Virus record (IMG/VR): IMGVR_UViG_3300029922_000001
Span: 124,001 to 188,000 of that record
Reading direction: 5' to 3' (one strand)
Length of the DNA stretch: 64,000 bases
The translations under genes and the position numbers were made by a program. The notes below the pieces were generated by a model that saw nothing but the letters and a program-made list of their open reading frames with translations, had not been told where the DNA came from and made no database searches. The first letter of the stretch is position 1. Each line of letters starts with the position of its first letter. Positions 3,352-63,456 of the stretch are shown piece after piece.

Positions 3352-3369
3352 AATCTGTATAAAACAATT

Positions 3370-6300
3370 ATGGATATTTTTGGTGCTTCATCAGATGATA
3401 CTGGCTTAGGTAATCAATACGTAGGCGAACCTCGAATTGCACGAGGATTATGTGTTATAGGTGGTTTAAATCAAAAAAGTACAGGCGGCATTCGAGGAAC
3501 TTTTGCTAAACTCACACCAGATGCAAAGGACGATTCAAGTGGTCAACAAATGAGTTTGAACTATTATATAGATAATCAAAATCGCCACAAAAACTCTAAA
3601 GAGACTACAACAATGGGACCAGAAGGTGGATATGGTTTATATGTTAATAATGCTTGTGGTGCGCCAATGTCCACTTTTGTATTTGGTGGAATATCTCCAG
3701 CAAGCATGGAGGCGAATCATCCTGTATTAAATCTTATTCAAGGACCACCATCTTCACAAAAATGTACATTTTCTGATGGCTCTATTCCCTATTATGATTC
3801 ACCTTATATAAATTTTAGTTATCAACCACAACAATATGGATCTACAGAGCAAGACATTGTGGACGATAGCGGTTTAGTAAACTTTAATGCATATTACATT
3901 AATAATAATCCACTTATTCCAACAATGCACAGTAATGGAATAACTTCTAATGGTGCTGCATTCGATTTATATTCGGCTTCTAAACCTTTAATGACTTATA
4001 ATATATGGCAGATAAATTATCCGTCAAGATTTCGAACATCAACCTTTGATATTAAAAATTATATTGAATATTCTCAAGATTTTGGTCCAATCATTAATAC
4101 GGCTACTGCATCCGCTACGGCATTAGCATATGATGGACCGATAATAAATCAATTTATATCAGAGAGGGGCGCTAAAGTTTCAGTATCTACACCTAAAGAT
4201 TTTGTTACCGTTGAAAGATTATATCCTATTAGTAATGATTTATTGTATTCTAATTTTCAAACAAACCCAGTGTTATCATATTACAGTTTAGTTAATTGTG
4301 ATGATGGTACACTAGATGCGCCATCTGCGATACCTGTTAGCATGACTGGCGCACAGAATTGCGGCTTTCAAATACACTTTGAGTGTTCTGGTATAGATTC
4401 TTCATATTCAGCATCAACAGGATCAGTTGCACCAAGTATCTCAATAAACTGGGGAGATCAAAATGTTCAATCAGCTACTTCTATTAATCAATTCCAACTT
4501 ATAATAAGTAGCCAAGGTACAGAATTAAGATATTTTAATCCTACCAAACAAATATATAACGTTGCGACTAATGAAGGCACACCAACTCCTGTGGACGCAA
4601 GATGGGTAAAGATTAAACTTCCAAATGGTAAATCTTTACTGCCTAATTCAGTAAGTTTTTCAGTATATGTTCATTATGCTGGACCTTATATGTTTGTTGG
4701 ATTTGGTGATTTAGGAAACTCTAGCGATGTTCAATGGTACTCACTAGGTCCTGTAGACAATGATGCTCAACAAAAAGGACAAAAGCTTAATTTAATGATC
4801 AGTGATCAGGCGACTATAGTTATTGGTATAGGGTACATGACTGCCCTTTTTCAATATGGTCCAATGACATTTAAGAATTATAATAAACAAAATATTACCA
4901 ACGCTACATCTATTGTCAATAAAGAATATTTAAATTATTTTGATTTTACGTTTACAGCCCCTGGAGACAAACAACAATATTTAGACACTAAGTTAATACA
5001 AAAAAACTTTTATAGTTTGGCATATACTGGGTTAACAAATACTACGAATGCAAAAGACACAAATATGAGTTATGCTCCAGACTGGAGAAATGCGACAAAT
5101 AATCAATTTTCTTTTGTTTGGAGAACGCCAATTACATTACTCCCAACTGGAGCAAGCCAGGTTGATCAAGTAGACCCATTGTATTATATTCAAGGAACAC
5201 TTCAATATAATACAACTTTTGAGGGACCTGTGTTTTACGAAATAACAAATAATATTACCCCATCTATACAGCCATTGCCGCCTTATATACCTTTAAATAT
5301 CAATGCTGGTAATAGGGTTATTGGTAGCACAACCAATGGAACAGATCAATATAATCCAAATTCATTAATAAATAATTTTTCATGGGGAGATATAAGCACT
5401 TATCTTACAAGGTGGAACATGTCTTATGCTTGTGAAGATAATGCAAATAGTTCATATTTATCAATGAGTGGGTCTGCTACATTTAAAGATATGGGATTAG
5501 ACATCCTTGGTAGAAAAATACTTACTGCTCTTGATGGTAACAGGATGACTATTTCTTTAGGTGCTGGTTATACTACTGATTATCCAGTTATATTTGGTCA
5601 AGGAGTAATAACTAAAGTTTCCACAGAAAGAGATGGAACTGGAACAATAACAACAATATCATTTGAAGATATTGGTACTTATTTACTAAGACACTGTAAA
5701 TTTAAAGATCCTTATATTTTTAGTGGTATGAAATATTGCCGTATTATACAAAGTATCTTAACTATACTTGGTTTTGATAAATATTATTCACAAAGACCAA
5801 ATTCCGTAAACAGTGCTTGGTCACAGGCTATGACATTAAGAGCTAATGCTTCTGGTTTACCTACTTCAATTAAGGGAGGTTCCATTCGTGTGGATTCTAA
5901 CACGGTGCCCTATAGTGTAATGAAAACTTTTTTACAGCTTATTATTGAAAAAGGTGCAACTCCTATATTTTGGTGGGACTGCGTTGATCAACTTTTCCGT
6001 ACTGAATGGAGGCAAGCTCCTGAATTTTTGGAAACTTTATATTTTGCCGGTTATAATAGTGGAAATAATAATGCATTATTACCCAACACTCAAAACACTC
6101 CAGACGATATTGTAAACAATTTAAATAGAGATTGGCAACACGGTGTGCTTGTTAAATCTTGGAAGTCAGACGTACAATATCAAAACTATATATATAAGCT
6201 TACCATTTGGGCTAAGGATTGTATTGGTAAATTAATGTCTTATAATTATTATGCTCCAAATGCTATTTCTCAAGACGTTTGGAATAAACTAAATAATTTA

Positions 6301-6669
6301 AAAAATATTCAAATGCAAGATATACCAACGGGTTATGTAGGTTATGAACATATAACTTTTGATGATGGTGGTAATCTTCCTGTTTTTGAAGATAAAAATG
6401 CTTTATATAAATATGGAGATGCGTTAAGGGATAGTTATACAGGAAAACCTTATGAGACTATTAATTTTGAAGTATACGTTACTCGCCCACTTTTACATTG
6501 GGGAAGATTCTCATTACAGACATTTATAGGGGATGGAAGTCCACAAACAGAACCTTATTTTTATAAAAAAGTAAATTATACTTATGAAAAAAATAAAAAT
6601 ATTATTATAGCCGATATAGAGGGTGAGTACATTCAACCGTTGAAAGCTATTGGTGGTGGTGAAATGTAA
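3370..6669 (+). CDS. Putative baseplate hub-like tail protein
   Basis: 1099 aa. The C-terminal half (ISLGAGY...IFGQGVITKVSTERDG...TISFEDIGTYLL...IIQSILTILG) has the pattern of GpD/gp27/gp44-type hub proteins; structural context. Judged by eye. Confidence 0.5.
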   Translation: MDIFGASSDDTGLGNQYVGEPRIARGLCVIGGLNQKSTGGIRGTFAKLTPDAKDDSSGQQMSLNYYIDNQNRHKNSKETTTMGPEGGYGLYVNNACGAPMSTFVFGGISPASMEANHPVLNLIQGPPSSQKCTFSDGSIPYYDSPYINFSYQPQQYGSTEQDIVDDSGLVNFNAYYINNNPLIPTMHSNGITSNGAAFDLYSASKPLMTYNIWQINYPSRFRTSTFDIKNYIEYSQDFGPIINTATASATALAYDGPIINQFISERGAKVSVSTPKDFVTVERLYPISNDLLYSNFQTNPVLSYYSLVNCDDGTLDAPSAIPVSMTGAQNCGFQIHFECSGIDSSYSASTGSVAPSISINWGDQNVQSATSINQFQLIISSQGTELRYFNPTKQIYNVATNEGTPTPVDARWVKIKLPNGKSLLPNSVSFSVYVHYAGPYMFVGFGDLGNSSDVQWYSLGPVDNDAQQKGQKLNLMISDQATIVIGIGYMTALFQYGPMTFKNYNKQNITNATSIVNKEYLNYFDFTFTAPGDKQQYLDTKLIQKNFYSLAYTGLTNTTNAKDTNMSYAPDWRNATNNQFSFVWRTPITLLPTGASQVDQVDPLYYIQGTLQYNTTFEGPVFYEITNNITPSIQPLPPYIPLNINAGNRVIGSTTNGTDQYNPNSLINNFSWGDISTYLTRWNMSYACEDNANSSYLSMSGSATFKDMGLDILGRKILTALDGNRMTISLGAGYTTDYPVIFGQGVITKVSTERDGTGTITTISFEDIGTYLLRHCKFKDPYIFSGMKYCRIIQSILTILGFDKYYSQRPNSVNSAWSQAMTLRANASGLPTSIKGGSIRVDSNTVPYSVMKTFLQLIIEKGATPIFWWDCVDQLFRTEWRQAPEFLETLYFAGYNSGNNNALLPNTQNTPDDIVNNLNRDWQHGVLVKSWKSDVQYQNYIYKLTIWAKDCIGKLMSYNYYAPNAISQDVWNKLNNLKNIQMQDIPTGYVGYEHITFDDGGNLPVFEDKNALYKYGDALRDSYTGKPYETINFEVYVTRPLLHWGRFSLQTFIGDGSPQTEPYFYKKVNYTYEKNKNIIIADIEGEYIQPLKAIGGGEM

Positions 6670-6935: not shown

Positions 6936-6999
6936 ATCAGAGAAATTTAGAACGGTCACTTGATGTAATTGTGTATAAATTAAAATACAGGAATAATTA

Positions 7000-9900
7000 A
7001 TGTCAGGATATACCAGCATATACAATTTGTTTTATTTACAAGCGGGGGATACTGTAGGTTCCTTAGCGTCTAATGATCAAAATCGTTTTACTGCAATTGA
7101 AACACAATTATTGAATTTGTACCAAATCATGAATAATGGTATTATTAATAATGCAGATGGTACTATTTCTTGGCAATTACAACCTGTTCCTGGTGATACC
7201 GCAGGACAATATGTAAATATTACTGCTGGTAATGGAAATATAAACTTTATGGCTTGTACTACAACAAGTACATATCAACTTACTTTAACTCAACCACCTG
7301 GAATTACATCTGGACAAATGATAGAGTATATCATCTATGCAACTACTGATGCTACCACTTCTTATACTGAAGATACTGTATTTTTGGCATCTTTACAAAC
7401 AGAAGCTGATACTAATTTGTTTGTATGTTTAGGAACAGTACAGGTTACATATAGTAATCCAGTACAATATGTGATAACCACTAATGGTAGAGTTGAAATT
7501 GATTTATTTTCAACCATTAGTGCGGCTGTAAAAAACCACATTCATATTGGCGGTCAAAATCCTTCACCTATTGATTTAGGTAAGCACGTTAGAGGATTTT
7601 TGAGTGCGGCTAATTTGTCAGATTTAGATATTAGCAAAGTGACTCAAGGCACCTTAAATCCTGATAGATTACCACAGATCAGTCATAATTCCTTAGCGGA
7701 CATTGGTTTAGTTCCTCACCCTCAATTAGAGTCTTTGATTGCATCTATTCTTAATCAAACTCAAGGTGCAATGAGTAGATTGTCTGATATTGGCTTATTA
7801 AACCTTATAGTCCTTATTCTTTCATTAAAAAGACAACTATTTTCTGGTGCTGATACTGACATAATGTATGATATTGATAATAGACTATACAATTCTATCT
7901 ATTATTTGCCCCATAAATGGTCTTATCAGTTAGAAGCCAATAACCTTCCTGGTACTCAAAATTATGCCACGATAGATAGGGTTAATCGTCAGATTGTAGG
8001 TACTGGATCTCAATTTTTTGGCAGTAATACATATGTTTGGAATTCCATTGCGCAATATGAAGTATCAGAAGCCTTATTGAATAACATTTCTACACCACCA
8101 ATTAATAATATAACCTTTGGAACAGAAGAATCAACTCAACAGTACTTTACAATTGATACACCTTTAAACTTTACCGCAATTAATGAACTTAATAGTACAA
8201 CATGGGTAGACGCTATTGACACTCAAGCTTTAGGAAATGGTACAAACATGAAGTTATTCTTTAGACGTTTGTATTATCGTATGTTTAATAGTACGGAAAC
8301 TACTGATTGGACTAATTTATCGACCTTAGTGCATGGATTCGCACTTCAATATTTAAATTCAGTAGGAACAAGCGAAGCATTTCCAGATGATGTTTATATG
8401 TTCTTCATTTTATCTAGTTCCAACTTAACATTATCAGGTGCAAATGCAAATGGAGCGGTTCAATTACAGGTTTCTACACCGTTTAAAATATATGACCATA
8501 CAGTTGACACTTTCCCTCTTCCATTAGAAGAATATCAGTTTGATGGTGGATTGCAAATGAATGGAAAGATTGTAGTTACAGATATTTCAACTATTTTAAC
8601 TGCTAGTCAAGTTGGTGGAGTCTTAGGATTTGGATATTTCTATCAGAATTTCTCTGGAATATCTGAACCAACTGAATCAACTGAAGTTAACGAAGTCCAA
8701 TTAGATACAGCGGTTAGTATTAGGTTATATCCTGTTAGTTCTAGTTATGTAGCTAGTAATTCAGATTTTAGTACATTCTCAGATACTGTTTTATCAGGTA
8801 TAGAAGCTGATCTTCCATCAATTGGTACCGATAATGGACATGGTTTGATTATTCCACCAGGCTCACCTTCTCCTATTTCATTCTTTGGTTTTAACACTGT
8901 ATATTGTGCCGAATCCGCAGTAATGATCTTCAGATTGGGTAACAATTTTCCTTCAACAGAATGGCAACAAGTATTTATTCAACTTACGACTAGTTCGTTA
9001 GGTGCTTCTACGCCTTTTGCTGTTAGTGGAGATCCTAGATTGTTAATTAAAACCCGCATTGCAAATAGTGCTGGTAATCTCAATAGTGAATCACAATTTG
9101 TTACAATCAATACAACACCTGGACAAACAGTATTTCCAATTCCAGCCCCAGATACTGGATCTGTAATAGATGTTGCGTTCTACCTGTTCCGTGATCCTGT
9201 AGATGCTTCATTAGCACCTAGAATTGATAGTGTTGCTTTGACTTATTCCGGTCCTGGCATGGCTAACTTTAATACGTGGGCAACGCAGCAAGATTGGGGT
9301 ACTACTAATGTTCCATTCCTTAACAAATTAAGTTATGTATTAACTCAAACACCCAATATTTATAGTGGTGTAGGTGTTGGATCTATTTCAAATACTCAAT
9401 ATGGATTACAATTAAGTGATACTGAAAACCTTGGTGCCTATTTGTTCTTTGATTCTGCATCTAATTCGTTTAAACAAGGAATAATCAACGCTGGAACTCA
9501 AACAGAAACACAAATTTTCACTCCTAGTGCATTGTATTTATCGCCTAGACAACAATGGCAAAGTTTAAATTCTGGATTTTTAGGTGCTATGGATGTTTTC
9601 TATCCTGTTGATGGAAGTATTGTGGTTGCCGATACAGTGAATGATAGAATTATTCAAATAGATTCAGATGGTAGTTTAATAAAATCATTACAGGGTAATA
9701 TTCGTTTATCACAAACCGCTAGAGATTTGGCAGTATTAAGTGCTATTTATAATCCAATATTGGGTTGCATTTATGTATTGTTCAGCCAAAATGTTATAAT
9801 TAAAAATAGCACGTTAATTTCAATTGTTATAAATAATGAATATTATCAATGTGGTACAGCCACATTGCCAGTGGTTCTATTTAGTCCAATACAGTCTGTT

Positions 9901-13190: not shown

Positions 13191-13245
13191 GCAAGATTTT
13201 AAATAAAAATGAAAAAACACTAAAACTCTTGTATAAAAATCAATA

Positions 13246-16200
13246 ATGGGTTATGCAATCAAGGTTCTATTTGCTGATAATATCGGCAATCAATATTTAA
13301 AGCACGATTATTTAATTGATGGTGGTTCTAACTATGTCAAAGGTGATACCACTTTCTTTGGCGAAATTCCAGTAGTTGCCCCTGCTTATACGAAAAACAG
13401 CAATTTATTGCTATTTCAATTTTTAGTTGTTGATGTTGACACCCGCAGCTATGTTCCATTTATTGGTGTAGGTTCTTTATCTATTTCTAATGATCCCAAT
13501 TTTGCAACCGCCCAAACATTAGTTATTCAACCAGCTTCAAGCGGACCTTTTTCAGCTTGGTATCCTACAAATCCAAATGACCCAAATGCACATTATAACA
13601 GTAACAATCTATATGTTGTTAATGTAGGTGGTGGTGGAGGTTCTGGAGATGCACTATTTGATTCTATAGCATATACAGGAACTAGTTATAGTGGTGATTT
13701 TGCTGGATATAATGAAACAACTTTGCCACCAGGCTACTTTGGTGTAGATAATTGGCAATTGTCAGCAAATGGTGGTGTTTCAACAGTCTATTTTAAGGTA
13801 ACCCTCACTTTAGATCCTACTGTTTACGCATCTGGTATTACTACTTATAATACAGCCAACTGGGTTACAGTTAATTATCCTGATAGTGTAGGTGGATTTA
13901 GCCAAATTTTATGGCAGTCTGAAAGAACTCCAACTCCTGGTGTTCCAGAAATATATTCACTATCTAAGAATTTATTAATTCCACCCTATTTAGTCAATAA
14001 CAGTGATCCTAGAACTTATACTTTGTATACTGGTGCCACTACTGCTTGGAGATTTAGAGCTTCATTAGATAATCAAACTGGCGTATACCAAAATGGTATT
14101 TCAAAATACATTGGTGATATGTATTCGTTTAATGCAGTTTATGCTTTACAAAGTTCAGGAATAAATCAGCAACCCAACAATTGGTCCAGCAAATTGGGAA
14201 CAATAGATAGATATCGTGGCGTTTCTGATCCATACGATAATACTCTTGTTAATTATGATGAAAATGTTGCTATTTCCAGTCTTGGTACGGTCTTGGCAGG
14301 TAGAGTGTCTTATAGAACCGTAGCTCCTTTGTTAAGCGCCACTCAAGTAGCTTTTAATAACTCTGTACAGGTTACAGGGTTTTCTGGTGGAGAACCTTCT
14401 TATGGTAGTACTATTAGTAGTCCACCTACACCAACTACACAATCTACAGAATATAGATTTAATAGCTCCGTGCCATTCCCTGTAACATCTACAAATAAAG
14501 ATGCTGTAGTTCAGGCTGCATTTAAGTTTACAAATCTCCCAATTTCTTTACCCATTGAAACTTGGTGTATTTTGTCTTTGGCTGATCCACAAACAACTAG
14601 CATTTACTTTAAGACAACTTTGAGTCTTAATTCTGATGGTAGTTTAAATGTTACTATTGAAAGAGTTTCAATCACAACAGTTACAGATAGTATTAATTTT
14701 AGAATTAATGAAAATCTAACCAGTAAGTTAGCAACTGGATTCTTATTAGAAATGTATGTGCAACAATTAGGTAATGGTGAAGTGATTATTAAATCATACG
14801 CCACAGAAATGACGGTAGAAACACCTATTGGATCAGTTCAATATTGCAGAGAAAGTGTTTATTTAGGTGCTTTTGTTTGTACTGGTTGGGGAACTAATTT
14901 GTATACCGGAAATCTATACGCAGAGACTGGATTTTATCTTAATGGTTCTAGTGGTTCCTTACTAGACTGTGCTGTAGCAACTGGTAGTTTCGTTTTAGAT
15001 GCAGATTTAGGTGATTGTAGAAAGTATAATTACGTACCACACTCCTTCCCAAGCACTATTACAGACGGCAATTCTTGGGGTACCCAGTTAAATGGATGGA
15101 ATTGGTTTACATATGATGATTTAGGTAATCCATCAACAACAGCTAATCAATATGAAATTTTAGGTACTGGTATTGTGTTGAATTCGTGTGAATTGGTGGC
15201 TACAAATAGCACGTTCTCTAAAAAGTTTGAAGTTAATGTGCAAGCAACTTTTGTTGACGGCATCAATCCTCCAGCGCAAAATTTCTACATTGGTGTCAGT
15301 AATCAAACACCTAATGTTTATGCTGTAAATGGTGGTTTAAATGCCCAAGAAGAAATAAAGTTTATTGAACGATTGAATTTAGCACCTGGTGGATTGGGTC
15401 TTACTGGTATACCAGACACATTAGCTGTTGTGTTTGATCAGGTTCAACAAATTATCTATATTCAACAGATGTTACCAACAGGTTATGTTGATACACAAAC
15501 TATTGCACCATTTAATCCTAAAAATGACGGTGAAACATGGTCTGTTGAATTTGATTTCTTAGATAATCAAGAAGCTGCCCCACAACTTCAAATCATTTTA
15601 AGAAGAAAACAAATACCACTATATGGTGGTTCTTCAGAAGTTGTTGAACAAGAGGGATTTAAATTTATTGGAAATTATATGACCCCAGCACCTGGTGGAT
15701 TGGGTTATTATGTTGCGGTTGGATCAACAACAAATGTCACTTTAAATTGCGTAAAAGTTCAAGGTTTACCACAAGTTGAACCTTATGGTACAGATTCATC
15801 TGCTTTATCCTGTCAATTCATTCAAGGTTCATACACTGAACAAGAATTCAAATCTATTGTAGGACAAGGTTGTTATTCTTCACTTAATGATGAAGATGAT
15901 TATTTATTTGCTAATCCGGTGGATCAAGATAATCCTTCTAACTGGTTAAGAATGACTCTAACAGATATAGTAGCCACTGATCCAACAGTTACAACAGCTA
16001 ATATTGGTGAAAAATTCTTTATTGGATCTGCTGGACCCACCAATTCTGGTACGTTAAAGGTGGTTGGACCATTGGGTACGTTGGTTATATTTACTATACC
16101 AGTAAATACTAATTATTATGTTCAAGTTCCAACTGGTTCGCATCAAGGTGTTTATAAACTATTTAACCAGAGTGGTACTGTTAGTATCTGTTCGGTTGAA

Positions 16201-21777: not shown

Positions 21778-21822
21778 TGATAAGCTAGGTTTTCACTTCA
21801 ATCAATCTGTATAAAGAAATAT

Positions 21823-24800
21823 ATGAGCGTTTTTTACCCCCTTAAATGGATTAAAAGCATTAAAGCTGGCAGTTATTCAACCATAACTACAGGTAATGCA
21901 TATGAAATTATTTACGGGGTGCCAACTTATGGTTTTACCGTTGATAACACTCCACCACAAGGCGAATGTATTATCAACGCAAGCTTAGGAAAGGGCGGTA
22001 TTGAAATTCATGCATTTGACGTATTTAGTGATTCAACTATCACCAATACGACTGACATTCCACATATTGACTCTGTTACTGCTTATACTCCGTATATTGG
22101 TTCTCAATTTTCCGTCCTAAATAATATCAATATCAATACAGTTACTCTTTCTTTTGATGTGTTGTCAGCCGCAATTGATAATGGTGTAGATTGTAATTTA
22201 CAATTATTTATTTATGATGATTTGAATTTTCTTCCAAATAATAGACTCAGTGAATCTACCAATAATGAACCAGTTGCTTCTTTATCAACATCCAAGGTAA
22301 CTAATTTTACTTTTAACTTTCCAACATTAACTCTTAATGCAAATCAATTATATTGGTTTGTACTCTATCAAACTGAAGAGTCTACTGATGTTAATGGAAA
22401 TCCTGTTATCGTGCAAGTAGTCTCGGTTCTTAATGCCAATAGTTTACATGCTTATTCTAGTGTTGCGGCAACTTTGCAACCATCTAATTCAACCTGGTCT
22501 GCTAAGACAGGATCATCGTTCATTTATTCATTGAGTGCGGCTGTACCTGGTGCTGATGCCCTTCCTGGTGTTAATGAATTAGCAGATGATTTAGGTAATT
22601 ATCTGAGAGATGCAGCAACATTAGGTGGAGCAAGTAATGAATTTGAATATGAAGTTATTGGTGATAATCAAGCCTTAATTTTCCAAAAATATTTAATGCA
22701 ATCATCCCCAGCATTACCTGTGAAAACAATTATTGTGGGATGTACATCAACTCAGCCAAAAGGTTATGTCATTGAAGTGTTACCAACAGGAAACAGCACT
22801 TGGATTGCGGCATTTACTATGCAATCTAGTTCTATCTATAGAGATTATGTTGAATATACATTTGGTACATCTTTATTGTTAGACGCAGTAAGAATTAGAT
22901 ATCTAGGTGATTATTACGCCAAGGTAAATGCTGGTACTATTACTATTTTTGCTCAAGATTCAGTAAGTGGTTGTTCCGCATTACAAGCGTCTCATTTTTC
23001 AGACTATAGAGATGTTAATGATATGCCAGGTTCAGATATTAATGGTTGGGTAACATTCTTTGGTGGTACTTATTTTAATAATTGGAATATGGTTAATGAA
23101 CAGTGGTATTGGGAGACTATTCCAGGTATTGCTAATGGATTTTTTACCCCCGATCCTCTTTTATCTATTGTGAATGCCCCTACTACGTTAGTCGCTGTTG
23201 GTACATCAAGTTTATCATCTCCAGGTACTAGAATTTACCAAATAAATACAGTTAGTGGTGACTTAATTCAAGCTAATACTGTAGTGGGATTTGATAGTAG
23301 TAGTCCAATACCAACTGTCAATTGTTCTGTTGTACATAATGGATATTTATATTTTGGTATGTCAGATGGAAGTGTTTATAGTACACTTGATGGCACCGCT
23401 TTGAATCTAGTGTGTACATTACCACAAGTTAACAGCACTAATACACCAGTCACAGTATTGGGTTCCTATTTAAACTATTTATATATTGGAACTTCAAGAG
23501 TTGGTAACCAAAGTTACATTTATAAATACAATACGAATCCAAACATTTTATCTCCATTGTCTTTTCAAAATACATTCCAAAATGTTGATTTATCGAACAT
23601 GTCAGTAGTTGGTAATAACATATATATAGGTACAAGTGGCGATATTGGTCAGAAAAATGGTACTATTGAAGTATATTCTGGTGGTGCTTGGAGTCAAAGT
23701 TATATCACTAATAGAGATGGTGTAGATTTCCTTGTATATTCTAGTTCTGTTAATCAGTTAGTTGCAGGTTTATCTTCTGGTCAATTAGTTTCTTTGCCAT
23801 TTAGTTCCAGTTTAGTTCCTGCATCTTGGGGCGCTCAATCTGCTCAGCCTTATACTGGATATACATCTTGTGTTGTAAATAATACAGGTGATAGATTGTT
23901 TATAGTAGCAACTACAGGGTCAGAAAATCAACTAGCATCCTATAAAATAGCTACGGGTCAGATGACATCTTTGGCTATACCTTACTTCTATAAATATGGC
24001 TTACAAAAACTAAGATTTACTGGTTCTACTAATCCTCTGGATTCAAATTACTATAGGAATCTAGCCTATGTTGGAACACCAGATGATTTAAATGTGCAAC
24101 CAACTGCTGAGCAAAGTTTATTTACATATGTTTCTGGTGATATTAACAACATAACTAGTGTTCAGCAATACTTTATGTGGAAAGGATGGATTAGATCCAA
24201 TTATAGTGATACATTTACATTTGATTTAACCAATAACGGTGGAGCTATTCTAACAATTGGTGAACAAATGGTTATTGATAATAGGGTTGATTCAGTTATT
24301 GCAAGTACTAAATCTTACAGTATGCCAATGGTTGCTGGTCAGTGGATTCCATTCCAATTAGCACAATATGCTGCGAATCCAAGCACTGAAGATCAAACAC
24401 AAATCATCCTCTCATTACAATGGTCTAGTTCTTCATTAGCTTTACAAAATATTCTAGTTGATAATACTGCTCCATTTATTTTAACTAACACTGCTGCAAC
24501 GACTCCAGCCTTATCTAATACCACTTATGAACCTACCAGTGTTCAAAATGATGGTAATTTAATATATACTTCCTTTACAGATGGAAAAGTTTATAGTTTT
24601 GATTATGCACACTTAGACACAACACAAAGAATTGCATACGTAAGATTTAAAGACAATGCTAATAATATATCTGCTGCAACTCAGTGTATTGATGACATTA
24701 TTCAAGATCCAACACAAGGTGGTAATACGCTAACTACTGGAGGTACTTTATTTCATATTGAAGCATATAACAACACTCCGTTGAACGTATATGATACTGC

Positions 24801-26400: not shown

Positions 26401-26417
26401 TTGTATAATTATCATTA

Positions 26418-39853: not shown

Positions 39854-39892
39854 TTAACCTTGATATTTAGTTTGAACTATAATAAAAGGCGC

Positions 39893-47287: not shown

Positions 47288-47320
47288 AGCTTATTGTAGG
47301 TTTTTTTGTATAAAAAGAGC

Positions 47321-47839
47321 ATGAGTGTGTATTTTGTTGATTCGGAATTTTACGAAGACGGAGAAATAATAGATTTATTATCCATTGCTATCGTGGCAAA
47401 TGATAATAAACAATATTACGCTGTGAATTCTGATTTTAACTTCACTAGAGCCAATAAAAATAAATGGCTCAAGGAAAACGTCTTGAAACATATTGATTTG
47501 GAGGATAAAACAAATCAAAGAAGTAAAAAACAAATTAAATCAGATATTTTAAAATTTATTGGTGATGATAAATCCCCGAAATTTGTGTCAGATTATTGCA
47601 GCTATGATTATATTGTGTTATGTCAAATATTTGGTAAAATGATTGATCTGCCTGATAATTTTCCTATGTATTGTAATGATCTACAAATGTTAAAGAAGAT
47701 AGTTGGTGCTAAGGATTCTGAATTGCCAACTTTGCCAAACGAACATCATGCACTTAATGATGCCTGTCAAGTACGCGAACAATGGTTATTCTTAGAAAAG
47801 CGTTTTCAGGAAAAATTCAAACAAAAACTGGTTTTTTAA
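47321..47839 (+). CDS. DEDDh 3'-5' exoribonuclease (Rv2179c/RNase AS-like)
   Basis: YFVDSEFYEDG, WLKENVL, YDYIVLCQIFGKMIDLP, HHALNDA. Start at ATG 47321, 6 nt after TATAAA. Confidence 0.85.
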   Translation: MSVYFVDSEFYEDGEIIDLLSIAIVANDNKQYYAVNSDFNFTRANKNKWLKENVLKHIDLEDKTNQRSKKQIKSDILKFIGDDKSPKFVSDYCSYDYIVLCQIFGKMIDLPDNFPMYCNDLQMLKKIVGAKDSELPTLPNEHHALNDACQVREQWLFLEKRFQEKFKQKLVF

Positions 47840-47847: not shown

Positions 47848-47877
47848 TTGACAAACTTCAGAGATTGTGGATATAAT
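47848..47877 (+). promoter_or_regulatory. Consensus sigma70 promoter of the RNA array
   Basis: TTGACA (47848-47853), 18-nt spacer, TATAAT (47872-47877). Confidence 0.8.
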
Positions 47878-48117: not shown

Positions 48118-48127
48118 CCGAGAATAT

Positions 48128-48198: not shown

Positions 48199-48211
48199 CC
48201 GAGATAAATAT

Positions 48212-48284: not shown

Positions 48285-48294
48285 CGAGAAATAT

Positions 48295-48367: not shown

Positions 48368-48376
48368 CGAGAGCAA

Positions 48377-48701: not shown

Positions 48702-48712
48702 ACGAGATGTAA

Positions 48713-48808
48713 GGGGGTATAGCTTAGTGGTTAAAGCTGGAGACTTTTGGAGTATTTCATGGAATATTGCAAAATCTCTAGACTAGGGTTCGATTCCCTG
48801 TGCCCCTA
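48713..48808 (+). tRNA. tRNA-Lys(TTT)-like with a 24-nt insert in the anticodon loop
   Basis: GGGGGTA/TGCCCCT; GCTT/AAGC; GGAGA-CTTTT-[48749-48772]-AA-TCTCT; TAGGG-TTCGATT-CCCTG. Confidence 0.75.
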
Positions 48809-48846
48809 CCGAGATTAAGACAAGTTTTATATGTATAAACACAAGT

Positions 48847-49176
48847 ATGTGCTGTAATAATTTTGAATATAATATACATCTAGGTCACCCTGTAGACTTA
48901 GAAATTGCCAAATACAAAACAATTAAACTTCTTCCTCGTCACCGAAAAATAAGTCCCTTAATTACGTGGATTATTAGAGATGATGATGGAACAGTACTGG
49001 GCACTACAGAAACTCATGGTTTAGAAATGAATGATCCAGAAATTAAGGGGATTTTACAAGAAGCTAAAGAAGCTTATCAATATAGAAATAGACTTTATGT
49101 TAAGTATGATACATGTAAAGATGAGTACGATAAGCTTGCCGTATTAACTACAATAAGATATGATTATCATACTTGA
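48847..49176 (+). CDS. Hypothetical protein
   Basis: 109 aa; TGTATAAA-7nt-ATG start. Confidence 0.65.
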   Translation: MCCNNFEYNIHLGHPVDLEIAKYKTIKLLPRHRKISPLITWIIRDDDGTVLGTTETHGLEMNDPEIKGILQEAKEAYQYRNRLYVKYDTCKDEYDKLAVLTTIRYDYHT

Positions 49177-50369: not shown

Positions 50370-50531
50370 TCACATGCAGTGGATTTTTAACTTTGTAAAA
50401 TAAAATAGTTACTGTATAAATAAAACTGAGTACTATCCAAGCAAAATATTATCAAAAACAATGTCGTAGATCCTACGCGGAATCGGTTGTTTTTAAATAA
50501 TATTAGTCAACGCAGAAAACTCAGGAAATAT

Positions 50532-51882: not shown

Positions 51883-51908
51883 AACTTATTATATGCTATA
51901 ATAATCCC

Positions 51909-52703
51909 ATGAAACAAGATAAAGATGCTTTAGGCAACAGAATGAAGGATCATGAACACCGAACACGGATTTTACTTCCGCGTAGAACAAATACAATGAT
52001 TAGGCTTGATGGAAAAGCTTTTCATACCTTTACAAAAGGATTCAAACGTCCTTTTGATACGGATTTAATGAATATCATGAATCAAACAGCATTAGAAACA
52101 TGTTCTACAATTCAAGGTGCCAAGTTTGCTTATGTTCAATCTGATGAAATTACTATTTTGGTTACAGATTACGAAACTGATGCATGGTTTGATGGTAATA
52201 TCCAGAAGATGACATCAATTTCAGCTTCTTATGCAACATCTGCGTTCAATGCTCATTATGGTAAATACATTTACGATCAAAATCCTAGCGAGTTTGACCC
52301 CTTAAAGGTTAAAAAAGCTAATTTTGATAGCCGTGTATGGACTTTAGCTGATCCTAATGAAGTTATTAATGTTTTAATTTGGAGACAACAAGATTGTGTA
52401 AAAAATAGTATTTCTATGGCAGCACAATCAATGTTCTCTCAGAAAGAATTGCAAAATAAGCATTCTGACGACATGCAAGAGATGATGTGGCAAAAAGGCG
52501 TCAATTGGAATGATTATACTGTTGGCGAAAAGCGTGGTCGTTTTATCGAAAAGATTTCCACACAAAAGGATATCGAATACATAGATAAGCGAACTGGTGA
52601 AAAACATATCAAAGAAGGTGTTATTCGATCTAAATGGAAAGTCGTAGAACCACCAACTTTTTCAACAGACAAAGACTTTATTCGTCGTTTCATGCCCATT
52701 TAA
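51909..52703 (+). CDS. Thg1-like tRNA(His) guanylyltransferase / 3'-5' polymerase
   Basis: IRLDGKAFHTFT, AYVQSDEIT, WFDGNIQKM, FDSRV, WRQQDCVKNSI. Confidence 0.93.
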   Translation: MKQDKDALGNRMKDHEHRTRILLPRRTNTMIRLDGKAFHTFTKGFKRPFDTDLMNIMNQTALETCSTIQGAKFAYVQSDEITILVTDYETDAWFDGNIQKMTSISASYATSAFNAHYGKYIYDQNPSEFDPLKVKKANFDSRVWTLADPNEVINVLIWRQQDCVKNSISMAAQSMFSQKELQNKHSDDMQEMMWQKGVNWNDYTVGEKRGRFIEKISTQKDIEYIDKRTGEKHIKEGVIRSKWKVVEPPTFSTDKDFIRRFMPI

Positions 52704-53065: not shown

Positions 53066-53099
53066 ATAGCAATTATACAAAATATTTTTAAATTAATGC

Positions 53100-56279: not shown

Positions 56280-56327
56280 ATTAAAATTATACAGTAAAAA
56301 CGGTTGATCTTAAACCGTTCAAGGTGT

Positions 56328-59102: not shown

Positions 59103-59435
59103 TTAAATATCCTTTGCGTTTGTGAAGGCAATTGCTTCCTTTCTTCTTCTATTAACATCCTTGCGGTGTAATAGATAACCATACACGAGGAAAAACAACA
59201 CAGGCAAAGCATAAAGTGCATTAGGACTATGAGTGATTAAAGCATTGTCACTAGCAAAAAGAACCCAAATCGTACTCCAACAGCCGCACAAGGTGATCAT
59301 GAAAAACATGAACTTGCCAAAACCGTTGATAATCGTATCTAAAAGACCGAATGTAATGACCTTGCCGCTCTTGTAGGCGTTGTCGAAGTCCTGTACGATT
59401 TCCAATCTTTGATTGTTCTGATTATAGTTGCTCAT
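59103..59435 (-). CDS. Two-TM membrane protein
   Basis: Two hydrophobic stretches; TGGTACAAT-6nt-ATG start. Confidence 0.7.
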   Translation of the reverse strand: MSNYNQNNQRLEIVQDFDNAYKSGKVITFGLLDTIINGFGKFMFFMITLCGCWSTIWVLFASDNALITHSPNALYALPVLFFLVYGYLLHRKDVNRRRKEAIAFTNAKDI

Positions 59436-59466
59436 GTTTTAATTGTACCAGCATTAAAGCTATTTG

Positions 59467-61689
59467 TCAAGTCTTGAATGGTAAATTTTTAAAAACTGGA
59501 ACTTCATTATACATTTCGTACATGAGAGCATTCAAATTAGTAGAACGTTGTTGTTGTCTATCATTGGTTACAGCCGCATCAATAGCAGATTGTGTGCCCA
59601 TGACAATGCAAAGTTTTTTAGCTCTAGTGACACCAGTATAAAACAAATTTCTCTGTAACATATTAGCATGAGAAGGATGTAAAATCATAATTACAGCGTT
59701 ATATTCACTACCTTGAACTTTGTGTACAGTACAACAGAATGAGTGAACAATATCTATGACATCACTTTTATCATAGGAAATTGGGTGTGGAATATCAGGG
59801 TATTGGACCTTGATATCTACATTATCATTACCTACTTTAACAATATCTGCAATTACACCAGTGTCGCCATTAAAAATTTCTTTATTATAGTCATTTCTGA
59901 TTTGCATAACACGATCCCCAACCCTAAGAACCCTAAAATCATTCTTGTATTCATTTTTGGATATGCTGGGTGGATTTAATGCTTGCTGTAAGACTGGATT
60001 TAAGTCTTCTACGCCTAATCCTCTCTTGTTCATGGGGCTAAGAATTTGAATTTCCGACGTTGGAATACCAAGCTTAGGAATTTGTTCAGTAATCATAGTT
60101 ATTAAATATTTTTTAAGTAATTCCATGTCGGAAACAGATACGAACATACAACTTTGCCCCTTGCTTTCTTTAGGTGAAGGCAAAGTTGGGACTCTTCCAT
60201 GAATAATATCGTGTGCAACGCTAATAATAGACGAACCAGCTTCTTGACGGTAAATTCGTTCTAATTTAGTCTTAGAAATAAAACCACCATCAATAAGATC
60301 CTTAAAAACATTACCAGGACCAACAGGAGGTAACTGATCTGAGTCACCAATAAAAATAATACGAGTATTAGTTTGTAGTGCCTCAAATAATTTAGCAGCT
60401 AAGACAACATCAATCATAGAGGATTCATCAATGATTAAACATTGAGTTGGCAATGGATTAAATTTATTAAACTCTGCCTTACCACTCTTGTCATATTTCA
60501 AAAGTCTATGAATTGTACTAGCGGGATAGCCTGAAGCACTACGTAGCTTTTTGGCAGCTTTACCAGTTGGTGAACATAGACTAAAACTCACACCATAATG
60601 TTCAAAAGCACGGCATAGTGTTCTTGTGATTGTTGATTTACCCGTACCTGGTCCTCCACGTAGAATTTTAACACGCTCAACCATTGCTTCAAAAAGTGCT
60701 TGAAACTGTTCATCATCCAATGTAATTCCCTCAGTAACTAATTGGTATTTTTCAACTGCTGCTTTAAATTCCTCAACAGAATTGACCAATGGAACATTAG
60801 GATAGTGATCATTTTCAAAAATACGTTCAGCAATAGTTTTTTCAGCGTAGTACAATTCAGCTAAGAAAATCTTATATTTGTCAAAGACGAAATCGCCTTT
60901 ATCAATACCTTTAGTAAGAGCAGAGCTAAACTCAGACACCGTAATATCGTAATCTAGAAGTTTTATAACGCTATCTGCAAGAGCATCTTGCATCATATAA
61001 CAGTGTCCTTGCTTACTGTGAGCCTCTAGCGTGTGTTCTGTAGCGGCAACGATTCTTTCTAGGGAATTATATTTTACACCCCGCGATAAGGCAAATTTAT
61101 CAACCCTATCAAAACCCAACATTCTAACCTTGATAAGATCGTAAGGGAAATTTTCAATTGTAGAAATAGGATCAGGGAATCGTTCAATAATACGCTTAGC
61201 GATAGTTGCAGACCATCCTAATGCCATAATTTTACCAAGTATTTGATTTTCATTACGCTTGTCTTCCCAATTTTCAGCAACAGAATCGGCACGATGCTTT
61301 TGGATGTCAGGAACCTCATAGACTCGTTTAGGGTCATGGTCCAAAACTTCCAACGTTTTATCGCCAAAATGGGCAACAATAGCATTTGCTGTAACAATTC
61401 CAACATCTGCAAACAGGTGAACTAGATAGTTGGTAATACCTTCTAGTGTGGAAAAACCATTTTCTTGATACGATAATGATTTGTATTGCTTTCCATATTT
61501 AGGGTGTTGAACTTCTTCAACCTGAAAAGTGATTTGTGCGCCATTGGTTAGGTTCGATAATTCGCCAACAACTTTAACAGTGCCTTTTTTGGTTTGTAAA
61601 GTTACGATAGCGTATCCGCTATCAAATCGAATTACATTGATAACTTCACCTTTAACGGTCTTAGATGGAGATTGTGTTTCTACACTCAT
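59467..61689 (-). CDS. recD2: RecD2-like SF1B helicase
   Basis: HPKYGKQY, HhH region, GGPGTGKS, IIDESSM, GDSDQLPPVGPG, IFNGDTG, TVHKVQGSEY, YTGVTRAK. Likely start 61689. Confidence 0.93.
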   Translation of the reverse strand: MSVETQSPSKTVKGEVINVIRFDSGYAIVTLQTKKGTVKVVGELSNLTNGAQITFQVEEVQHPKYGKQYKSLSYQENGFSTLEGITNYLVHLFADVGIVTANAIVAHFGDKTLEVLDHDPKRVYEVPDIQKHRADSVAENWEDKRNENQILGKIMALGWSATIAKRIIERFPDPISTIENFPYDLIKVRMLGFDRVDKFALSRGVKYNSLERIVAATEHTLEAHSKQGHCYMMQDALADSVIKLLDYDITVSEFSSALTKGIDKGDFVFDKYKIFLAELYYAEKTIAERIFENDHYPNVPLVNSVEEFKAAVEKYQLVTEGITLDDEQFQALFEAMVERVKILRGGPGTGKSTITRTLCRAFEHYGVSFSLCSPTGKAAKKLRSASGYPASTIHRLLKYDKSGKAEFNKFNPLPTQCLIIDESSMIDVVLAAKLFEALQTNTRIIFIGDSDQLPPVGPGNVFKDLIDGGFISKTKLERIYRQEAGSSIISVAHDIIHGRVPTLPSPKESKGQSCMFVSVSDMELLKKYLITMITEQIPKLGIPTSEIQILSPMNKRGLGVEDLNPVLQQALNPPSISKNEYKNDFRVLRVGDRVMQIRNDYNKEIFNGDTGVIADIVKVGNDNVDIKVQYPDIPHPISYDKSDVIDIVHSFCCTVHKVQGSEYNAVIMILHPSHANMLQRNLFYTGVTRAKKLCIVMGTQSAIDAAVTNDRQQQRSTNLNALMYEMYNEVPVFKNLPFKT

Positions 61690-61860
61690 TAGGTTCATTA
61701 TAAACGATTTGAAGCCTCTAAGTCAACCTAAAAGACATTCTCTTTTTTGGCGTACATAATAAGGCATATAATAAATTAAGCTAGATTTAATATCTAAGAG
61801 GAATTTAAAAAACATTTTTGAATGAAATATTGTATTCTAAAAAACAAAAAGGAGAATAAA

Positions 61861-62147: not shown

Positions 62148-62429
62148 ATGTGGTATTCGCCTGATGAAACTAATAAGATAAAGAAAGTAGAGGAACAAAA
62201 AGGACCCAATGGGACTTTACTTTCTTTATTAACTAAAAAAATTGTTAAAAGAATTTTGTTTAGTAAGGGTGAGTATCGTATCTATGACGAAGACGTAGAA
62301 GTTTTCACACGTAAAATCTTGAATCAAATTCAGAAAAGCTATGGTGACATTGAGAAAATTCGATATAAAATTCCTAATACCGAATTGTTACCCATTATAG
62401 AAAAGATAGCCAAACAAATTGTAAAGTAA
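62148..62429 (+). CDS. Hypothetical protein
   Basis: 93 aa, 2 nt after the previous stop. Confidence 0.65.
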   Translation: MWYSPDETNKIKKVEEQKGPNGTLLSLLTKKIVKRILFSKGEYRIYDEDVEVFTRKILNQIQKSYGDIEKIRYKIPNTELLPIIEKIAKQIVK

Positions 62430-62445
62430 ATTGTATAATTTAAGT

Positions 62446-63456
62446 ATGCAAAATAGAAAATTTGATCCAGATAGAATTATTGATTATAATGTAGACTATT
62501 ACACTATATTAGGCTTGAAGAGAGATGACTTTCCTAAAGACACAAGCCCAAATTCTAAGAGAAAAATTGCCGATTTGCTTGATCGTGCCTACAGAGAAAG
62601 TGCAATCATTTGTCATCCTGATAATGGTGGCACAGAAGAAGACTTTAAGAGACTTATTAGGGCACACACCGTTCTTAGTGACCATTTAATGCGTAAAATG
62701 TATGATAGTGGCGGTACATATAGACCAAGAACGATAGAAGATGGTACCAGTGATTGGGAAATTGACTGGGATAAGTTAGGAAACTATAGAAAAGGTACTA
62801 CAGCAGATACTATTGGATATGGTTTATTTGCCATCGTATGTGACATCATTGACGAATTGAATTTAATTCCAGCATTTTACCCATCTGAGCCTTATCACTC
62901 TTATAATTGGGATTTTGTTATTCTTAAAAAAGAAATTAAAGCAATTATCAATGGTAATCTCGTTAAATCTCCTGAAATTCCCAAATTAGCTATTGCTGTC
63001 GTACCAGATGAAGAAGAAGTTTTACGACTTACAGATAGTAGTAAAATTGCAACATCATTGCCATTTAAAATTTATATATATATCCCTCGTAAAAGTATTC
63101 AGCCATTGAGAGCAAATGACGAAGAAATTAAAGGAAATAGTCGCTCATACACTATGAAAGGTCATATGAAAGCTATTACATATTCTGATATAGATTTAGT
63201 AGAAACAACGCAACTTTCAGTTGCTGAAGATTATCTTCGTAATAATTTGATTCATGATTTGGAAAAGTATCGTAATGGAACGCTTGAAAAAGAACAACAA
63301 AAGAAAGATACTGAAGCTAAACGTACCACTTGGATGGACACTGAGCAAATCAAACAAATGGATCAGAACTTATTGAAGGCAATTTTACAGACAAAGGTTT
63401 ACACATTTAAACCTGATCCTACTAAATCTGAGTTTTTACAAAAAATTCCAGATTAA
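62446..63456 (+). CDS. J-domain protein with unknown C-terminal domain
   Basis: DYYTILGL, AYRESAIICHPDNGG, FKRLIRAHTVLSD..RKMYD; start at ATG 62446 (TGTATAAT-6nt). Confidence 0.85.
   Translation: MQNRKFDPDRIIDYNVDYYTILGLKRDDFPKDTSPNSKRKIADLLDRAYRESAIICHPDNGGTEEDFKRLIRAHTVLSDHLMRKMYDSGGTYRPRTIEDGTSDWEIDWDKLGNYRKGTTADTIGYGLFAIVCDIIDELNLIPAFYPSEPYHSYNWDFVILKKEIKAIINGNLVKSPEIPKLAIAVVPDEEEVLRLTDSSKIATSLPFKIYIYIPRKSIQPLRANDEEIKGNSRSYTMKGHMKAITYSDIDLVETTQLSVAEDYLRNNLIHDLEKYRNGTLEKEQQKKDTEAKRTTWMDTEQIKQMDQNLLKAILQTKVYTFKPDPTKSEFLQKIPD

What the first reader, a model, noticed from the sequence alone, without database searches (positions are those of the whole stretch)
3356..62448. Pervasive leaderless gene starts: TA(T/C)AA(A/T) 5-9 nt before ATG, without SD
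Seen (spacer in nt): 3370(6), 13246(8), 21823(7), 26418(8), 37716(7), 39893(9), 47321(6), 48847(7), 51909(6), 62446(6); on the - strand 47287(5), 51882(5), 53065(6), 56279(6), 59435(6), 61689(7). The motif is often TGTATAA, usually with no -35 box or SD. Inference: transcription starts at or beside the ATG, so even giant structural genes are individually promoted leaderless mRNAs. This corrects several ORF-track starts and may hint at the host or at bypassing normal initiation.
Basis: partly seen in the sequence, partly recalled or inferred. Interest (0 to 1): 0.6.

Follow-up and report, generated by a model that had tools for sequence, protein, structure and literature searches.

The report
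Leaderless promoters across a giant phage
In this roughly 520-kb phage from peat, a third to a half of the genes have a promoter -10 box placed so that transcription should start on the A of the ATG; this known way of expressing genes without a leader is used here on an unusually large scale.

Summary
All 16 listed sites have TA(T/C)AA(A/T) at the stated 5-9 nt before an ATG that opens a long ORF.

The loose pattern is not more frequent than chance in this AT-rich DNA (31 found, 32 expected). What is non-random is where it lies: 13-17 hits sit on gene starts, against 0.4-0.7 expected.

Across the 441-kb contig, 32-46% of about 594 ORFs have a -10-like hexamer 5-7 nt before the start, against 2.3% of internal start codons (ATG/GTG/TTG). 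There are three classes:
- (G)GTATAAT.

These are promoters, not ribosome signals:
- The hexamer occupies -12 to -7 relative to the A of ATG.
- Position -1 is a pyrimidine in about 95% of cases.
- The start is almost always ATG.
- Divergent genes lie only 26-38 nt apart.
- The same motifs sit 8 nt before two tRNA genes, and sometimes before leaders that carry an SD.
- The phage encodes two sigma factors.
- Two relatives keep the layout.

No transcript 5' ends could be read, so the start at ATG is inferred. The mechanism is known from Thermus phages and Deinococcota, so this is a new member of a known kind.

The parts
3356..3372 (+). TG + TATAAA (3358-3363), 6-nt spacer, ATG 3370 of a 1099-aa ORF
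   Evidence: first ATG of the ORF; T at -1
13230..13248 (+). TG + TATAAA (13232-13237), 8-nt spacer, ATG 13246 of the 2843-aa ORF; predicted leader of 1-2 nt
21808..21825 (+). TG + TATAAA (21810-21815), 7-nt spacer, ATG 21823 of the 1525-aa ORF
26402..26420 (+). TG + TATAAT (26404-26409), 8-nt spacer, ATG 26418 of the 3178-aa ORF; only 17 nt after the previous stop codon
37703..37718 (+). TATAAT, 7-nt spacer, ATG 37716 of DnaJ
   Evidence: The Pfam J domain begins at residue 3. The L008 orthologue has the same hexamer and spacing with diverged flanks
39878..39895 (+). TATAAT, 9-nt spacer, ATG 39893 of the UvsW-like helicase; replaces the TTG at 39860
   Evidence: An identical 584-aa product was called independently (P0001). 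The L008 orthologue has TATAAT with a 10-nt spacer
47293..47298 (-). TACAAT, 5-nt spacer, ATG 47287 (135-aa ORF); half of a back-to-back pair with 47321, with 33 nt between the two ATGs
47307..47323 (+). TG + TATAAA (47309-47314), 6-nt spacer, ATG 47321; replaces the TTG at 47306
   Evidence: The L008 orthologue instead has an SD and a TTG start
47848..47877 (+). Perfect TTGACA-18-TATAAT promoter about 170 nt upstream of the tRNA cluster (48047-48810); shows that a canonical sigma-70-type consensus is in use
   Evidence: tRNAs
48832..48849 (+). TG + TATAAA (48834-48839), 7-nt spacer, ATG 48847
49149..49162 (+).
51888..51893 (-). TATAAT, 5-nt spacer, ATG 51882; back-to-back with 51909, with 26 nt between the two ATGs
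   Evidence: the L008 orthologue has TATAAT with a 6-nt spacer
51897..51911 (+). TATAAT, 6-nt spacer, ATG 51909; TTGAAA lies 17 bp upstream
   Evidence: the L008 orthologue uses an SD and a GTG start
53072..53079 (-). TG + TATAAT (53077-53072), 6-nt spacer, ATG 53065; replaces the TTG at 53080
56286..56293 (-). TG + TATAAT (56291-56286), 6-nt spacer, ATG 56279 (macro-domain protein); preceded by a hairpin and a T-run
59442..59470 (-). TTGACA-17-TACAAT, 6-nt spacer, ATG 59435
61697..61726 (-). TTGACT-18-TATAAT, 7-nt spacer, ATG 61689 (RecD2-like helicase); replaces the ATG at 61698
62432..62448 (+). TG + TATAAT (62434-62439), 6-nt spacer, ATG 62446; replaces the TTG at 62431
6966..7002 (+). Counter-example: TGTATAAA followed by a 20-nt leader with a weak SD-like CAGGA before ATG 7000 (1298-aa ORF). 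Same promoter type, not leaderless

Best explanation
The hexamers are -10 elements of sigma-dependent bacterial-type promoters. They occupy -12 to -7 relative to the A of the start codon, so RNA polymerase begins transcription on, or within 1-3 nt of, the ATG. The resulting mRNAs have no 5' UTR or SD. They would be translated through the leaderless pathway, in which the ribosome recognises a 5'-terminal AUG.

The phage uses at least three promoter classes built this way:
- TGTATAA(A/T): -10 only; on the giant ORFs and others between 20 and 200 kb.
- (G)GTATAAT: -10 only.
- TCCCCAA, 15 nt, TATACT, preceded by RAGG: about 100 copies on the 441-kb contig and more on the adjoining 78-kb contig; mostly small ORFs on one strand.

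Shown: the geometry, the statistics, that the motif can be separated from translation, and its conservation in relatives. Inferred: the transcription start itself, that the classes are temporal, and that the bipartite class is read by one of the two phage sigma factors.
For: 1. Geometry. The modal spacer is 6 nt, which is the canonical -12 to -7 position. GGTATACT occurs 143 times (10.7 in simulations), 99 of them with ATG exactly 6 nt downstream (0.1 in simulations), and 92 of those open ORFs of at least 50 aa.

2. Bipartite class. TCCCCA lies 16 bp upstream of TATACT, within the 16-18 bp window for a -35/-10 pair. In 42 of 97 tandem cases it lies inside the upstream ORF.

3. Start-site signature. 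Position -1 is a pyrimidine in 229 of 257 motif-linked ATGs overall and in 94-96% of those with 5- or 6-nt spacers. The figure is 34% for SD-led starts and 52% for internal ATGs (p = 3e-22 and 1e-32). This matches the known preference of bacterial RNA polymerase for a pyrimidine at -1 and a purine at +1.

4. Start codon. For the main motif and spacer combinations, the starts are 203 ATG against 7 GTG or TTG. SD-led starts are 145 against 15 (odds ratio 3, p = 0.024).

5. Not a translation signal. A full TCCCCAA/GGTATACT unit ends 8 nt before tRNA-Arg (G000 413604). GGTATAAT ends 8 nt before a tRNA with anticodon CTA (353602). At least four complete units are followed by 22-39-nt leaders, three of them with an SD-like sequence.

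6. Divergent pairs. Ten divergent gene pairs with the motif on both sides have only 26-38 nt between their ATGs, with back-to-back hexamers, which leaves no room for leaders.

7. Sigma factors. Two sigma-70-family genes with regions 2 and 4 score above the TIGR02937 cut-off.

8. Conservation. Relatives L008 (47% GC) and L010 keep the hexamer and spacing at orthologous starts while the flanks diverge. Where L008 has an SD instead, its start codon is TTG or GTG.

9. Calibration. A region of Thermus phage phiYS40, a phage whose transcripts are reported in the literature to be mostly leaderless, shows the same signature more weakly: 9 of 48 genes, under a looser pattern than used elsewhere (TAnnnT at 5-8 nt). 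The distant relative L009 is mostly SD-led (2 of 24).
Against: No transcript 5' ends were available. The single metatranscriptome that holds the phage gave only assembled contigs at 48377-48599 and 50428-50617.

The host is unknown, so its ability to translate leaderless mRNA is assumed.

Many of these genes are 17-45 nt from the preceding gene with no terminator. Read-through transcripts must therefore also exist, and the share of protein made from the leaderless form is unknown.

The 274/594 figure uses a crude ORF caller and a start choice that favours the motif. The unbiased figure, using the first start codon only, is 191/594.

The start-codon contrast is only modestly significant.
Confidence: 0.8

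Rival explanations
1. The hexamer is a translation-initiation element on a longer mRNA: an AU-rich, non-SD ribosome-binding or enhancer site. Transcription would start far upstream.
For: It occupies the place where an SD would sit. Intergenic gaps are short and lack terminators, so polycistronic RNAs are likely. In the large class, RAGG just upstream of TATACT resembles an SD core placed 12 nt from the ATG.
Against: The same motifs precede tRNA genes at the same distance and precede separate SD-containing leaders. A conserved second box lies 16 bp upstream, inside the preceding ORF. The pyrimidine at -1 is specific to these starts and opposite to SD-led starts. Back-to-back hexamers occur between divergent ATGs 26-38 nt apart.
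Confidence: 0.05
2. Dual use. The units are leaderless promoters, and on read-through transcripts the conserved RAGG of the large class also serves as a long-spaced SD, so that internal cistrons are still translated.
For: AGG is nearly invariant in the large class (70-79 copies at fixed positions). This is more than the G at -14 of an extended -10 needs. Genes are packed 12-60 nt apart without terminators.
Against: A 12-nt spacing is beyond the usual optimum of 5-10 nt. GG also precedes TATAAT in a class with no other SD resemblance, which suggests that the polymerase or sigma factor contacts these bases.
Confidence: 0.1
3. The motif marks an RNA-processing site. An endonuclease would cut just before the ATG and create leaderless mRNAs after transcription.
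For: Leaderless mRNAs can in principle arise by cleavage. Some variants with a 9-nt spacer read ACA before the ATG.
Against: No MazF/PemK family gene was found on the contig. The motif has promoter-like anatomy: two boxes, a 16-bp gap, and tolerance of 5-7 nt spacers. Divergent pairs with overlapping hexamers on opposite strands fit promoters, not cleavage sites.
Confidence: 0.03
4. Chance in AT-rich DNA combined with start codons chosen to fit.
For: The loose pattern is no more frequent than in shuffles. TGTATAAW as a word is not enriched (89 observed, 107 simulated).
Against: Placement at ORF starts has p = 1e-17 to 1e-21. Eleven of the 16 sites are the unbiased first start codon. The rate at first starts is 32% genome-wide against 2.3% at internal starts. 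The layout is conserved in relatives.
Confidence: 0.02

Closest known systems
Thermus phages phiYS40 and Lalka27a (and the extended -10 middle/late promoters of P23-45)
   Same: They are large, AT-rich phages, and most of their transcripts are reported to start on the A or G of the initiator codon (bioRxiv 10.64898/2026.04.20.719267, citing the phiYS40 work). P23-45 middle and late promoters are of the extended -10 class without a -35 (PMC7403470). A phiYS40 region shows the same sequence signature, including one TGTATAAT.
   Different: No detectable protein homology was found in the one pair compared, the 1525-aa ORF against YS40_076. This phage is about 3.4 times larger and comes from peat, not a hot spring. 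It encodes its own sigma factors and IF3. It has a bipartite class of more than 100 copies with a TCCCCAA box that is not described for those phages. The fraction of such genes appears higher (32-46%, against 9 of 48 in the sampled phiYS40 region, which was scanned with a looser pattern).
ORF-adjacent -10 motif of Deinococcus-Thermus bacteria (TANNNT 6-7 bp before the ORF)
   Same: Same geometry, and a similar share of genes (about 30%). An RBS motif coexists on the other genes. A -10 alone is sufficient as a promoter, and a -35 at 17 bp enhances it. This was validated experimentally as the promoter of leaderless genes (PMC12340547). The commonest form there is TACACT; here it is TATACT.
   Different: That is a property of cellular genomes in one phylum. 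Here it is a phage with class-specific upstream elements. Whether the host belongs to that phylum is unknown.
Phage T4 late promoters (TATAAATA at -10, no -35, read by the sigma-like gp55)
   Same: The TGTATAAA class is a -10-only element with a similar core, and it sits on large genes that are probably late.
   Different: From general knowledge, T4 late mRNAs have leaders with an SD. No gp55 homologue was sought here. The phage's sigma-70-family proteins carry region 4, which gp55 lacks.
Leaderless transcriptomes of mycobacteria and other Actinobacteria, and lambda cI from PRM
   Same: The transcription start coincides with the start codon, there is no SD, and a 5'-terminal AUG or GUG is needed (PMC4633059 is listed among search hits; lambda cI is from general knowledge).
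   Different: Those are GC-rich hosts or a single gene. Here it is a genome-wide design in a 34% GC phage.

Membership tests
Leaderless genes with an ORF-adjacent -10 promoter | A -10-like hexamer (TANNNT) ends 5-8 nt before the start codon | tested here: met
   All 16 sites. 191-274 of 594 ORFs genome-wide, against 2.3% of controls
Leaderless genes with an ORF-adjacent -10 promoter | No Shine-Dalgarno sequence between promoter and start codon | tested here: met
   1 of 274 motif-linked starts has GGAG or GAGG at 4-11 nt. This is partly forced by lack of space
Leaderless genes with an ORF-adjacent -10 promoter | The primary transcript 5' end maps on the first base of the start codon | not testable with these tools
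   Only assembled metatranscriptome contigs were available, and none lay at a predicted start
Leaderless genes with an ORF-adjacent -10 promoter | The start codon begins with a purine, AUG or GUG, and TTG is avoided | tested here: met
   203 ATG against 7 others after the motif (2 GTG, 4 TTG and 1 further TTG from the TGTATAAW class); SD-led starts include 14 TTG
Leaderless genes with an ORF-adjacent -10 promoter | The protein is made from the leaderless mRNA | not testable with these tools
   Needs proteomics or a reporter in the unknown host
Sigma-70-type bacterial promoter | -10 hexamer with T at 1, A at 2 and T at 6, and the start site about 7 nt after it with a pyrimidine at -1 and a purine at +1 | tested here: met
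   Consensus TATAAT, TATACT or TATAAA. The A of ATG is the 6th-8th nt after the hexamer. Pyrimidine at -1 in 94-96%
Sigma-70-type bacterial promoter | -35 element 16-18 bp upstream | tested here: inconclusive
   The large class has an invariant non-canonical TCCCCA at 16 bp. The TATAAT and TGTATAAW classes show no enrichment of TTGACA. A few sites have it (the PARP orthologue pair)
Sigma-70-type bacterial promoter | A sigma factor is available to read non-host consensus elements | tested here: met
   Two phage sigma-70-family genes score above the NCBIfam cut-off. Which promoters they read was not tested
T4-type late promoter | TATAAATA octamer at -10, read by a gp55-like factor without region 4 | tested here: not met
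   The core is TGTATAA(A/T) with a variable continuation. The sigma-70-family proteins found have region 4. No gp55 family search was run
Archaeal TATA-box promoter with leaderless mRNA | TATA box centred about 26 nt before the start site | tested here: not met
   The hexamer lies at -12 to -7. The genome carries bacterial sigma factors, IF3 and a tmRNA

The most novel reading that the evidence does not exclude
The phage runs a partly orthogonal expression system. More than 100 phage-specific bipartite promoters would be read by its own sigma factor, and about 40% of its genes, plus some tRNAs, would be made as RNAs with no 5' leader. Combined with its own IF3, this would let phage messages be translated while SD-dependent host initiation is shut down or outcompeted. 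That would be a genome-wide takeover of translation in a megaphage, not merely a reflection of host habits.
Probability: 0.15. Interest if true: 0.8.

Novelty: new member of a known kind. Interest (0 to 1): 0.55.

Why it matters
It gives a sequence-only rule for calling starts and promoters in this lineage of very large phages, and standard gene callers mis-place several of those starts.

It also shows that leaderless expression, so far documented experimentally for Thermus phages and a few bacterial phyla, can be the main design of a roughly 520-kb phage from a cold, acidic soil habitat.

The promoter of more than 100 copies with a non-canonical upstream box, next to two phage sigma genes and a phage IF3, is a ready-made system for asking how a phage redirects both transcription and translation initiation. 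The 'leaderless' tRNAs suggest that the same logic extends to non-coding genes.

Tried and rejected
1. RNA evidence. One run search and one read lay found the phage in many peat DNA runs but in only one metatranscriptome. That run was held as contigs, so it carries no start-site information.

2. Close relatives in the viral collection. The 1525-aa protein and the bipartite promoter pattern gave nothing beyond two single chance hits.

3. Host identification.
   - A pattern scan of prokaryote genomes gave only single chance hits.
   - Relatives cannot be drawn for a virus record.
   - The closest bacterial IF3 homologues are scattered, at 37-43% identity (Micavibrio, Acetobacter, Kofleriaceae).
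   - Sigma-factor look-alikes are mostly viral, with some Bacillota.
   - One distant helicase homologue is labelled as a Bacteroidota MAG.
   None of this is enough to name a host.

4. Own RNA polymerase. There is no Pfam hit for the multisubunit (Rpb1 domain 2) family. The T7-like search found nothing either, but its control genomes also gave no hits, so that absence is weak.

5. Other translation genes. S21, IF1, S1 and MazF families were not found.

6. Homology of the 1525-aa ORF to the equal-length phiYS40 ORF: none.

7. TAG recoding as an explanation for the two tRNAs with anticodon CTA: no excess of open frames when TAG is read as sense.

8. The phiYS40 and P23-45 primary papers are not in the held library. 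They are cited only through papers that describe them.

Full report
**What the window is.** The window is bases 124001-188000 of a 441,498-bp single contig at 33.9% GC, held as a virus record. It comes from a peat metagenome and recurs in many peat samples.

It is a very large tailed-phage-like genome. It carries DnaJ, a UvsW-like and a RecD2-like helicase, an S8 protease, TnpB, 25 tRNA/tmRNA genes, and giant ORFs of up to 3178 aa without confident family matches.

The contig ends inside a promoter unit. A 78,352-bp contig from the same sample overlaps its last 127 nt at 100% identity. The genome is therefore about 520 kb, consistent with a 521,591-bp contig that carries an identical helicase.

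**Checking the observation.** All 16 sites have TA(T/C)AA(A/T) at exactly the stated spacer before an ATG. Nine carry TG directly in front of the hexamer. One further site (49160) belongs with them.

The loose pattern by itself is not enriched: there are 31 copies of TATAAW-N5-9-ATG, and shuffles give 32 +/- 5. The signal lies in placement. Seventeen of the 48 matching ATGs are gene starts where 0.7 is expected (p = 1e-21). Nine of the 10 TGTATAAW hits are gene starts. Eleven of the 16 sites are the first start codon of the longest ORF in the mechanical ORF list, so the result does not rest on choosing starts to fit.

**The genome-wide picture.** I made a crude codon-usage-based call of 594 ORFs covering 91.5% of the contig.
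- Using the first start codon only, 191 ORFs have TAnAnT or TATAAA 5-7 nt upstream.
- Allowing any start within 50 codons, 274 do.
- The rate at internal in-frame start codons (ATG/GTG/TTG) is 2.3%.
- About 20 more ORFs have TATAAT at 8-9 nt.

The strongest signal is a bipartite unit: TCCCCAA, 15 nt, TATACT, 6 nt, ATG, with RAGG directly before TATACT.
- GGTATACT occurs 143 times against 10.7 in simulated sequence.
- 99 copies have ATG exactly 6 nt downstream, against 0.1 simulated.
- 92 of those open ORFs of at least 50 aa.
- These units are concentrated at 340-441 kb on the + strand before small ORFs (median 115 aa). They continue on the 78-kb contig.

Two further classes are (G)GTATAAT (about 100 copies at 5-7 nt) and TGTATAA(A/T) (about 28 copies). 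It is spread over 20-200 kb and includes four of the five largest ORFs in the window.

**Promoter or ribosome signal?** Eight lines of sequence evidence point to transcription.

1. *Geometry.* A 6-nt spacer puts the hexamer at -12 to -7 relative to the A of ATG, which is the textbook position of a -10 element. Tolerance of 5-7 nt matches the flexibility of start-site selection.

2. *Second box.* The large class has a second invariant box 16 bp upstream of the hexamer. In 42 of 97 tandem cases it lies inside the preceding ORF. No ribosome-binding model predicts this.

3. *Base at -1.* The base before the ATG is a pyrimidine in 94-96% of starts with 5-6-nt spacers, against 34% of SD-led starts and 52% of internal ATGs (p = 3e-22 and 1e-32). 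This is the known initiation preference of bacterial RNA polymerase for a pyrimidine at -1 and a purine at +1.

4. *Start codon.* The codon after the motif is almost always ATG (203 against 7). SD-led starts include 14 TTG. In two orthologue pairs, the gene that has the -10 box and ATG in this phage has an SD and TTG or GTG in relative L008.

5. *Non-coding targets.* A complete bipartite unit ends 8 nt before tRNA-Arg (G000 413604), and GGTATAAT ends 8 nt before a tRNA with anticodon CTA (353602). At least four complete units are followed by 22-39-nt leaders, three with an SD-like sequence. The motif therefore works apart from any start codon.

6. *Divergent pairs.* Ten divergent gene pairs with the motif on both sides have only 26-38 nt between their two ATGs, in a stereotyped arrangement with hexamers back to back. 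Two of these pairs are in the window (47287/47321 and 51882/51909). There is no room for leaders.

7. *Sigma factors.* The phage encodes two sigma-70-family proteins with regions 2 and 4. No multisubunit polymerase family hit was found. The T7-like search also found nothing, but its controls gave no hits either, so it says little.

8. *Relatives.* L008 (helicase 71% identical, syntenic, 47% GC) has the layout at 6 of 18 genes. L010 (IF3 73% identical) has it at 7 of 17. Hexamer and spacing are kept at orthologous starts while the flanks diverge, for example at DnaJ, the helicase, and a PARP-like gene with TTGACA-17-hexamer. A more distant relative, L009, is mostly SD-led.

**What is not shown.** No transcript 5' end was observed. 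The one metatranscriptome holding this phage is available only as contigs, at 48377-48599 and 50428-50617. Starts with 8-9-nt spacers would carry leaders of 1-3 nt. One giant ORF (ATG 7000) has the same promoter type with a 20-nt leader.

SD-led genes coexist: 66-88 of the 320 genes without the motif, against a 2.5% background. The host ribosome therefore uses SD, and normal initiation is not bypassed wholesale.

Short gaps without terminators mean that read-through RNAs also exist. Whether the conserved AGG doubles as a long-spaced SD on them is open.

The host could not be named.

**Comparison with what is known.** The ORF-adjacent -10 motif is established in Deinococcus-Thermus bacteria: TANNNT, often TACACT, 6-7 bp before about 30% of ORFs, and validated experimentally as the promoter of leaderless genes (PMC12340547).

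Most transcripts of Thermus phages phiYS40 and Lalka27a are reported to begin on the initiator codon (bioRxiv 10.64898/2026.04.20.719267). P23-45 middle and late promoters are of the extended -10 class (PMC7403470).

A 50-kb region of phiYS40 served as a positive control. Under a looser pattern (TAnnnT at 5-8 nt), it shows the same signature at 9 of 48 genes. In the one protein pair compared, this phage shows no homology to phiYS40.

I found no paper that links leaderless expression to very large phages.

**Verdict.** The phenomenon is larger than reported: three promoter classes, a third to a half of all genes, and even tRNAs. It is a new and unusually extensive instance of a known mechanism, not a new mechanism.

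The phage's own sigma factors and a bona fide IF3 (136 bits against the infC model) leave room for a more interesting reading in which the phage redirects initiation. I rate that reading at about 15%.

Noticed in passing
G000 340000-441498 and contig Ga0302280_1000099 (loci L021, L023, L037, L044): About 100 near-identical bipartite units (TCCCCAA, 15 nt, TATACT, 6 nt, ATG) stand before small ORFs on one strand. The 441-kb contig stops inside one. A 78-kb contig overlaps its last 127 nt, so the genome is about 520 kb although it is rated complete.
   Followed up: yes
window 48047-48810: A tRNA cluster: Lys(ttt), a tRNA with anticodon CTA (amber suppressor type), a fifth tRNA at 48212-48284 found only by Rfam, Lys(ctt), and an unusually long (98-nt) tRNA-Gln. 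A second CTA tRNA lies at G000 353602. TAG is the rarest stop codon (54 of 594), and no sign of TAG recoding was found.
   Followed up: partly
window 48377-48599: An exact 223-nt contig from a peat metatranscriptome lies between two tRNAs where no ORF, tRNA or Rfam family is found. It may be an unannotated RNA or a stable piece of the tRNA precursor. The phage is transcribed in situ.
   Followed up: partly
G000 254486-255016 (- strand; locus L005): The phage encodes a full-length IF3 (infC model, 136 bits). Its own promoter (GGTATAAT) is followed by a short leader. A 73%-identical copy occurs in relative L010. S21, IF1 and S1 were not found.
   Followed up: partly
G000 59271-59876 (+) and 229402-229983 (-): Two phage sigma-70-family genes, one ECF-like and one SigB/F/G-like. 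The first itself starts 6 nt after TGTATAAA.
   Followed up: partly
G000 293574-293927: A phage-encoded tmRNA (ARAGORN tag GKSYAYVG), preceded by TTGACT and GGTATAAT with a leader of about 20 nt.
   Followed up: no
window 11909-13156 (-) and 53134-54255 (+): Two IS605/TnpB-type transposase genes. One is inserted between the giant ORFs on the opposite strand.
   Followed up: no
window 35988-37022 versus L008 5204-7309: The S8 protease is 344 aa here. Its orthologue in relative L008 is 701 aa and carries an intein with a LAGLIDADG endonuclease.
   Followed up: no
G000 about 257593 (- strand) and L010 3778-5070: A PARP/WGR-domain gene is conserved in both phages, with a conserved TTGACA-17-hexamer leaderless-type promoter.
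   Followed up: no
window 55338-56279 (-), 49160-50020 (+): A macro-domain protein and an R2K-type ATP-grasp protein. Both have leaderless-type starts.
   Followed up: no
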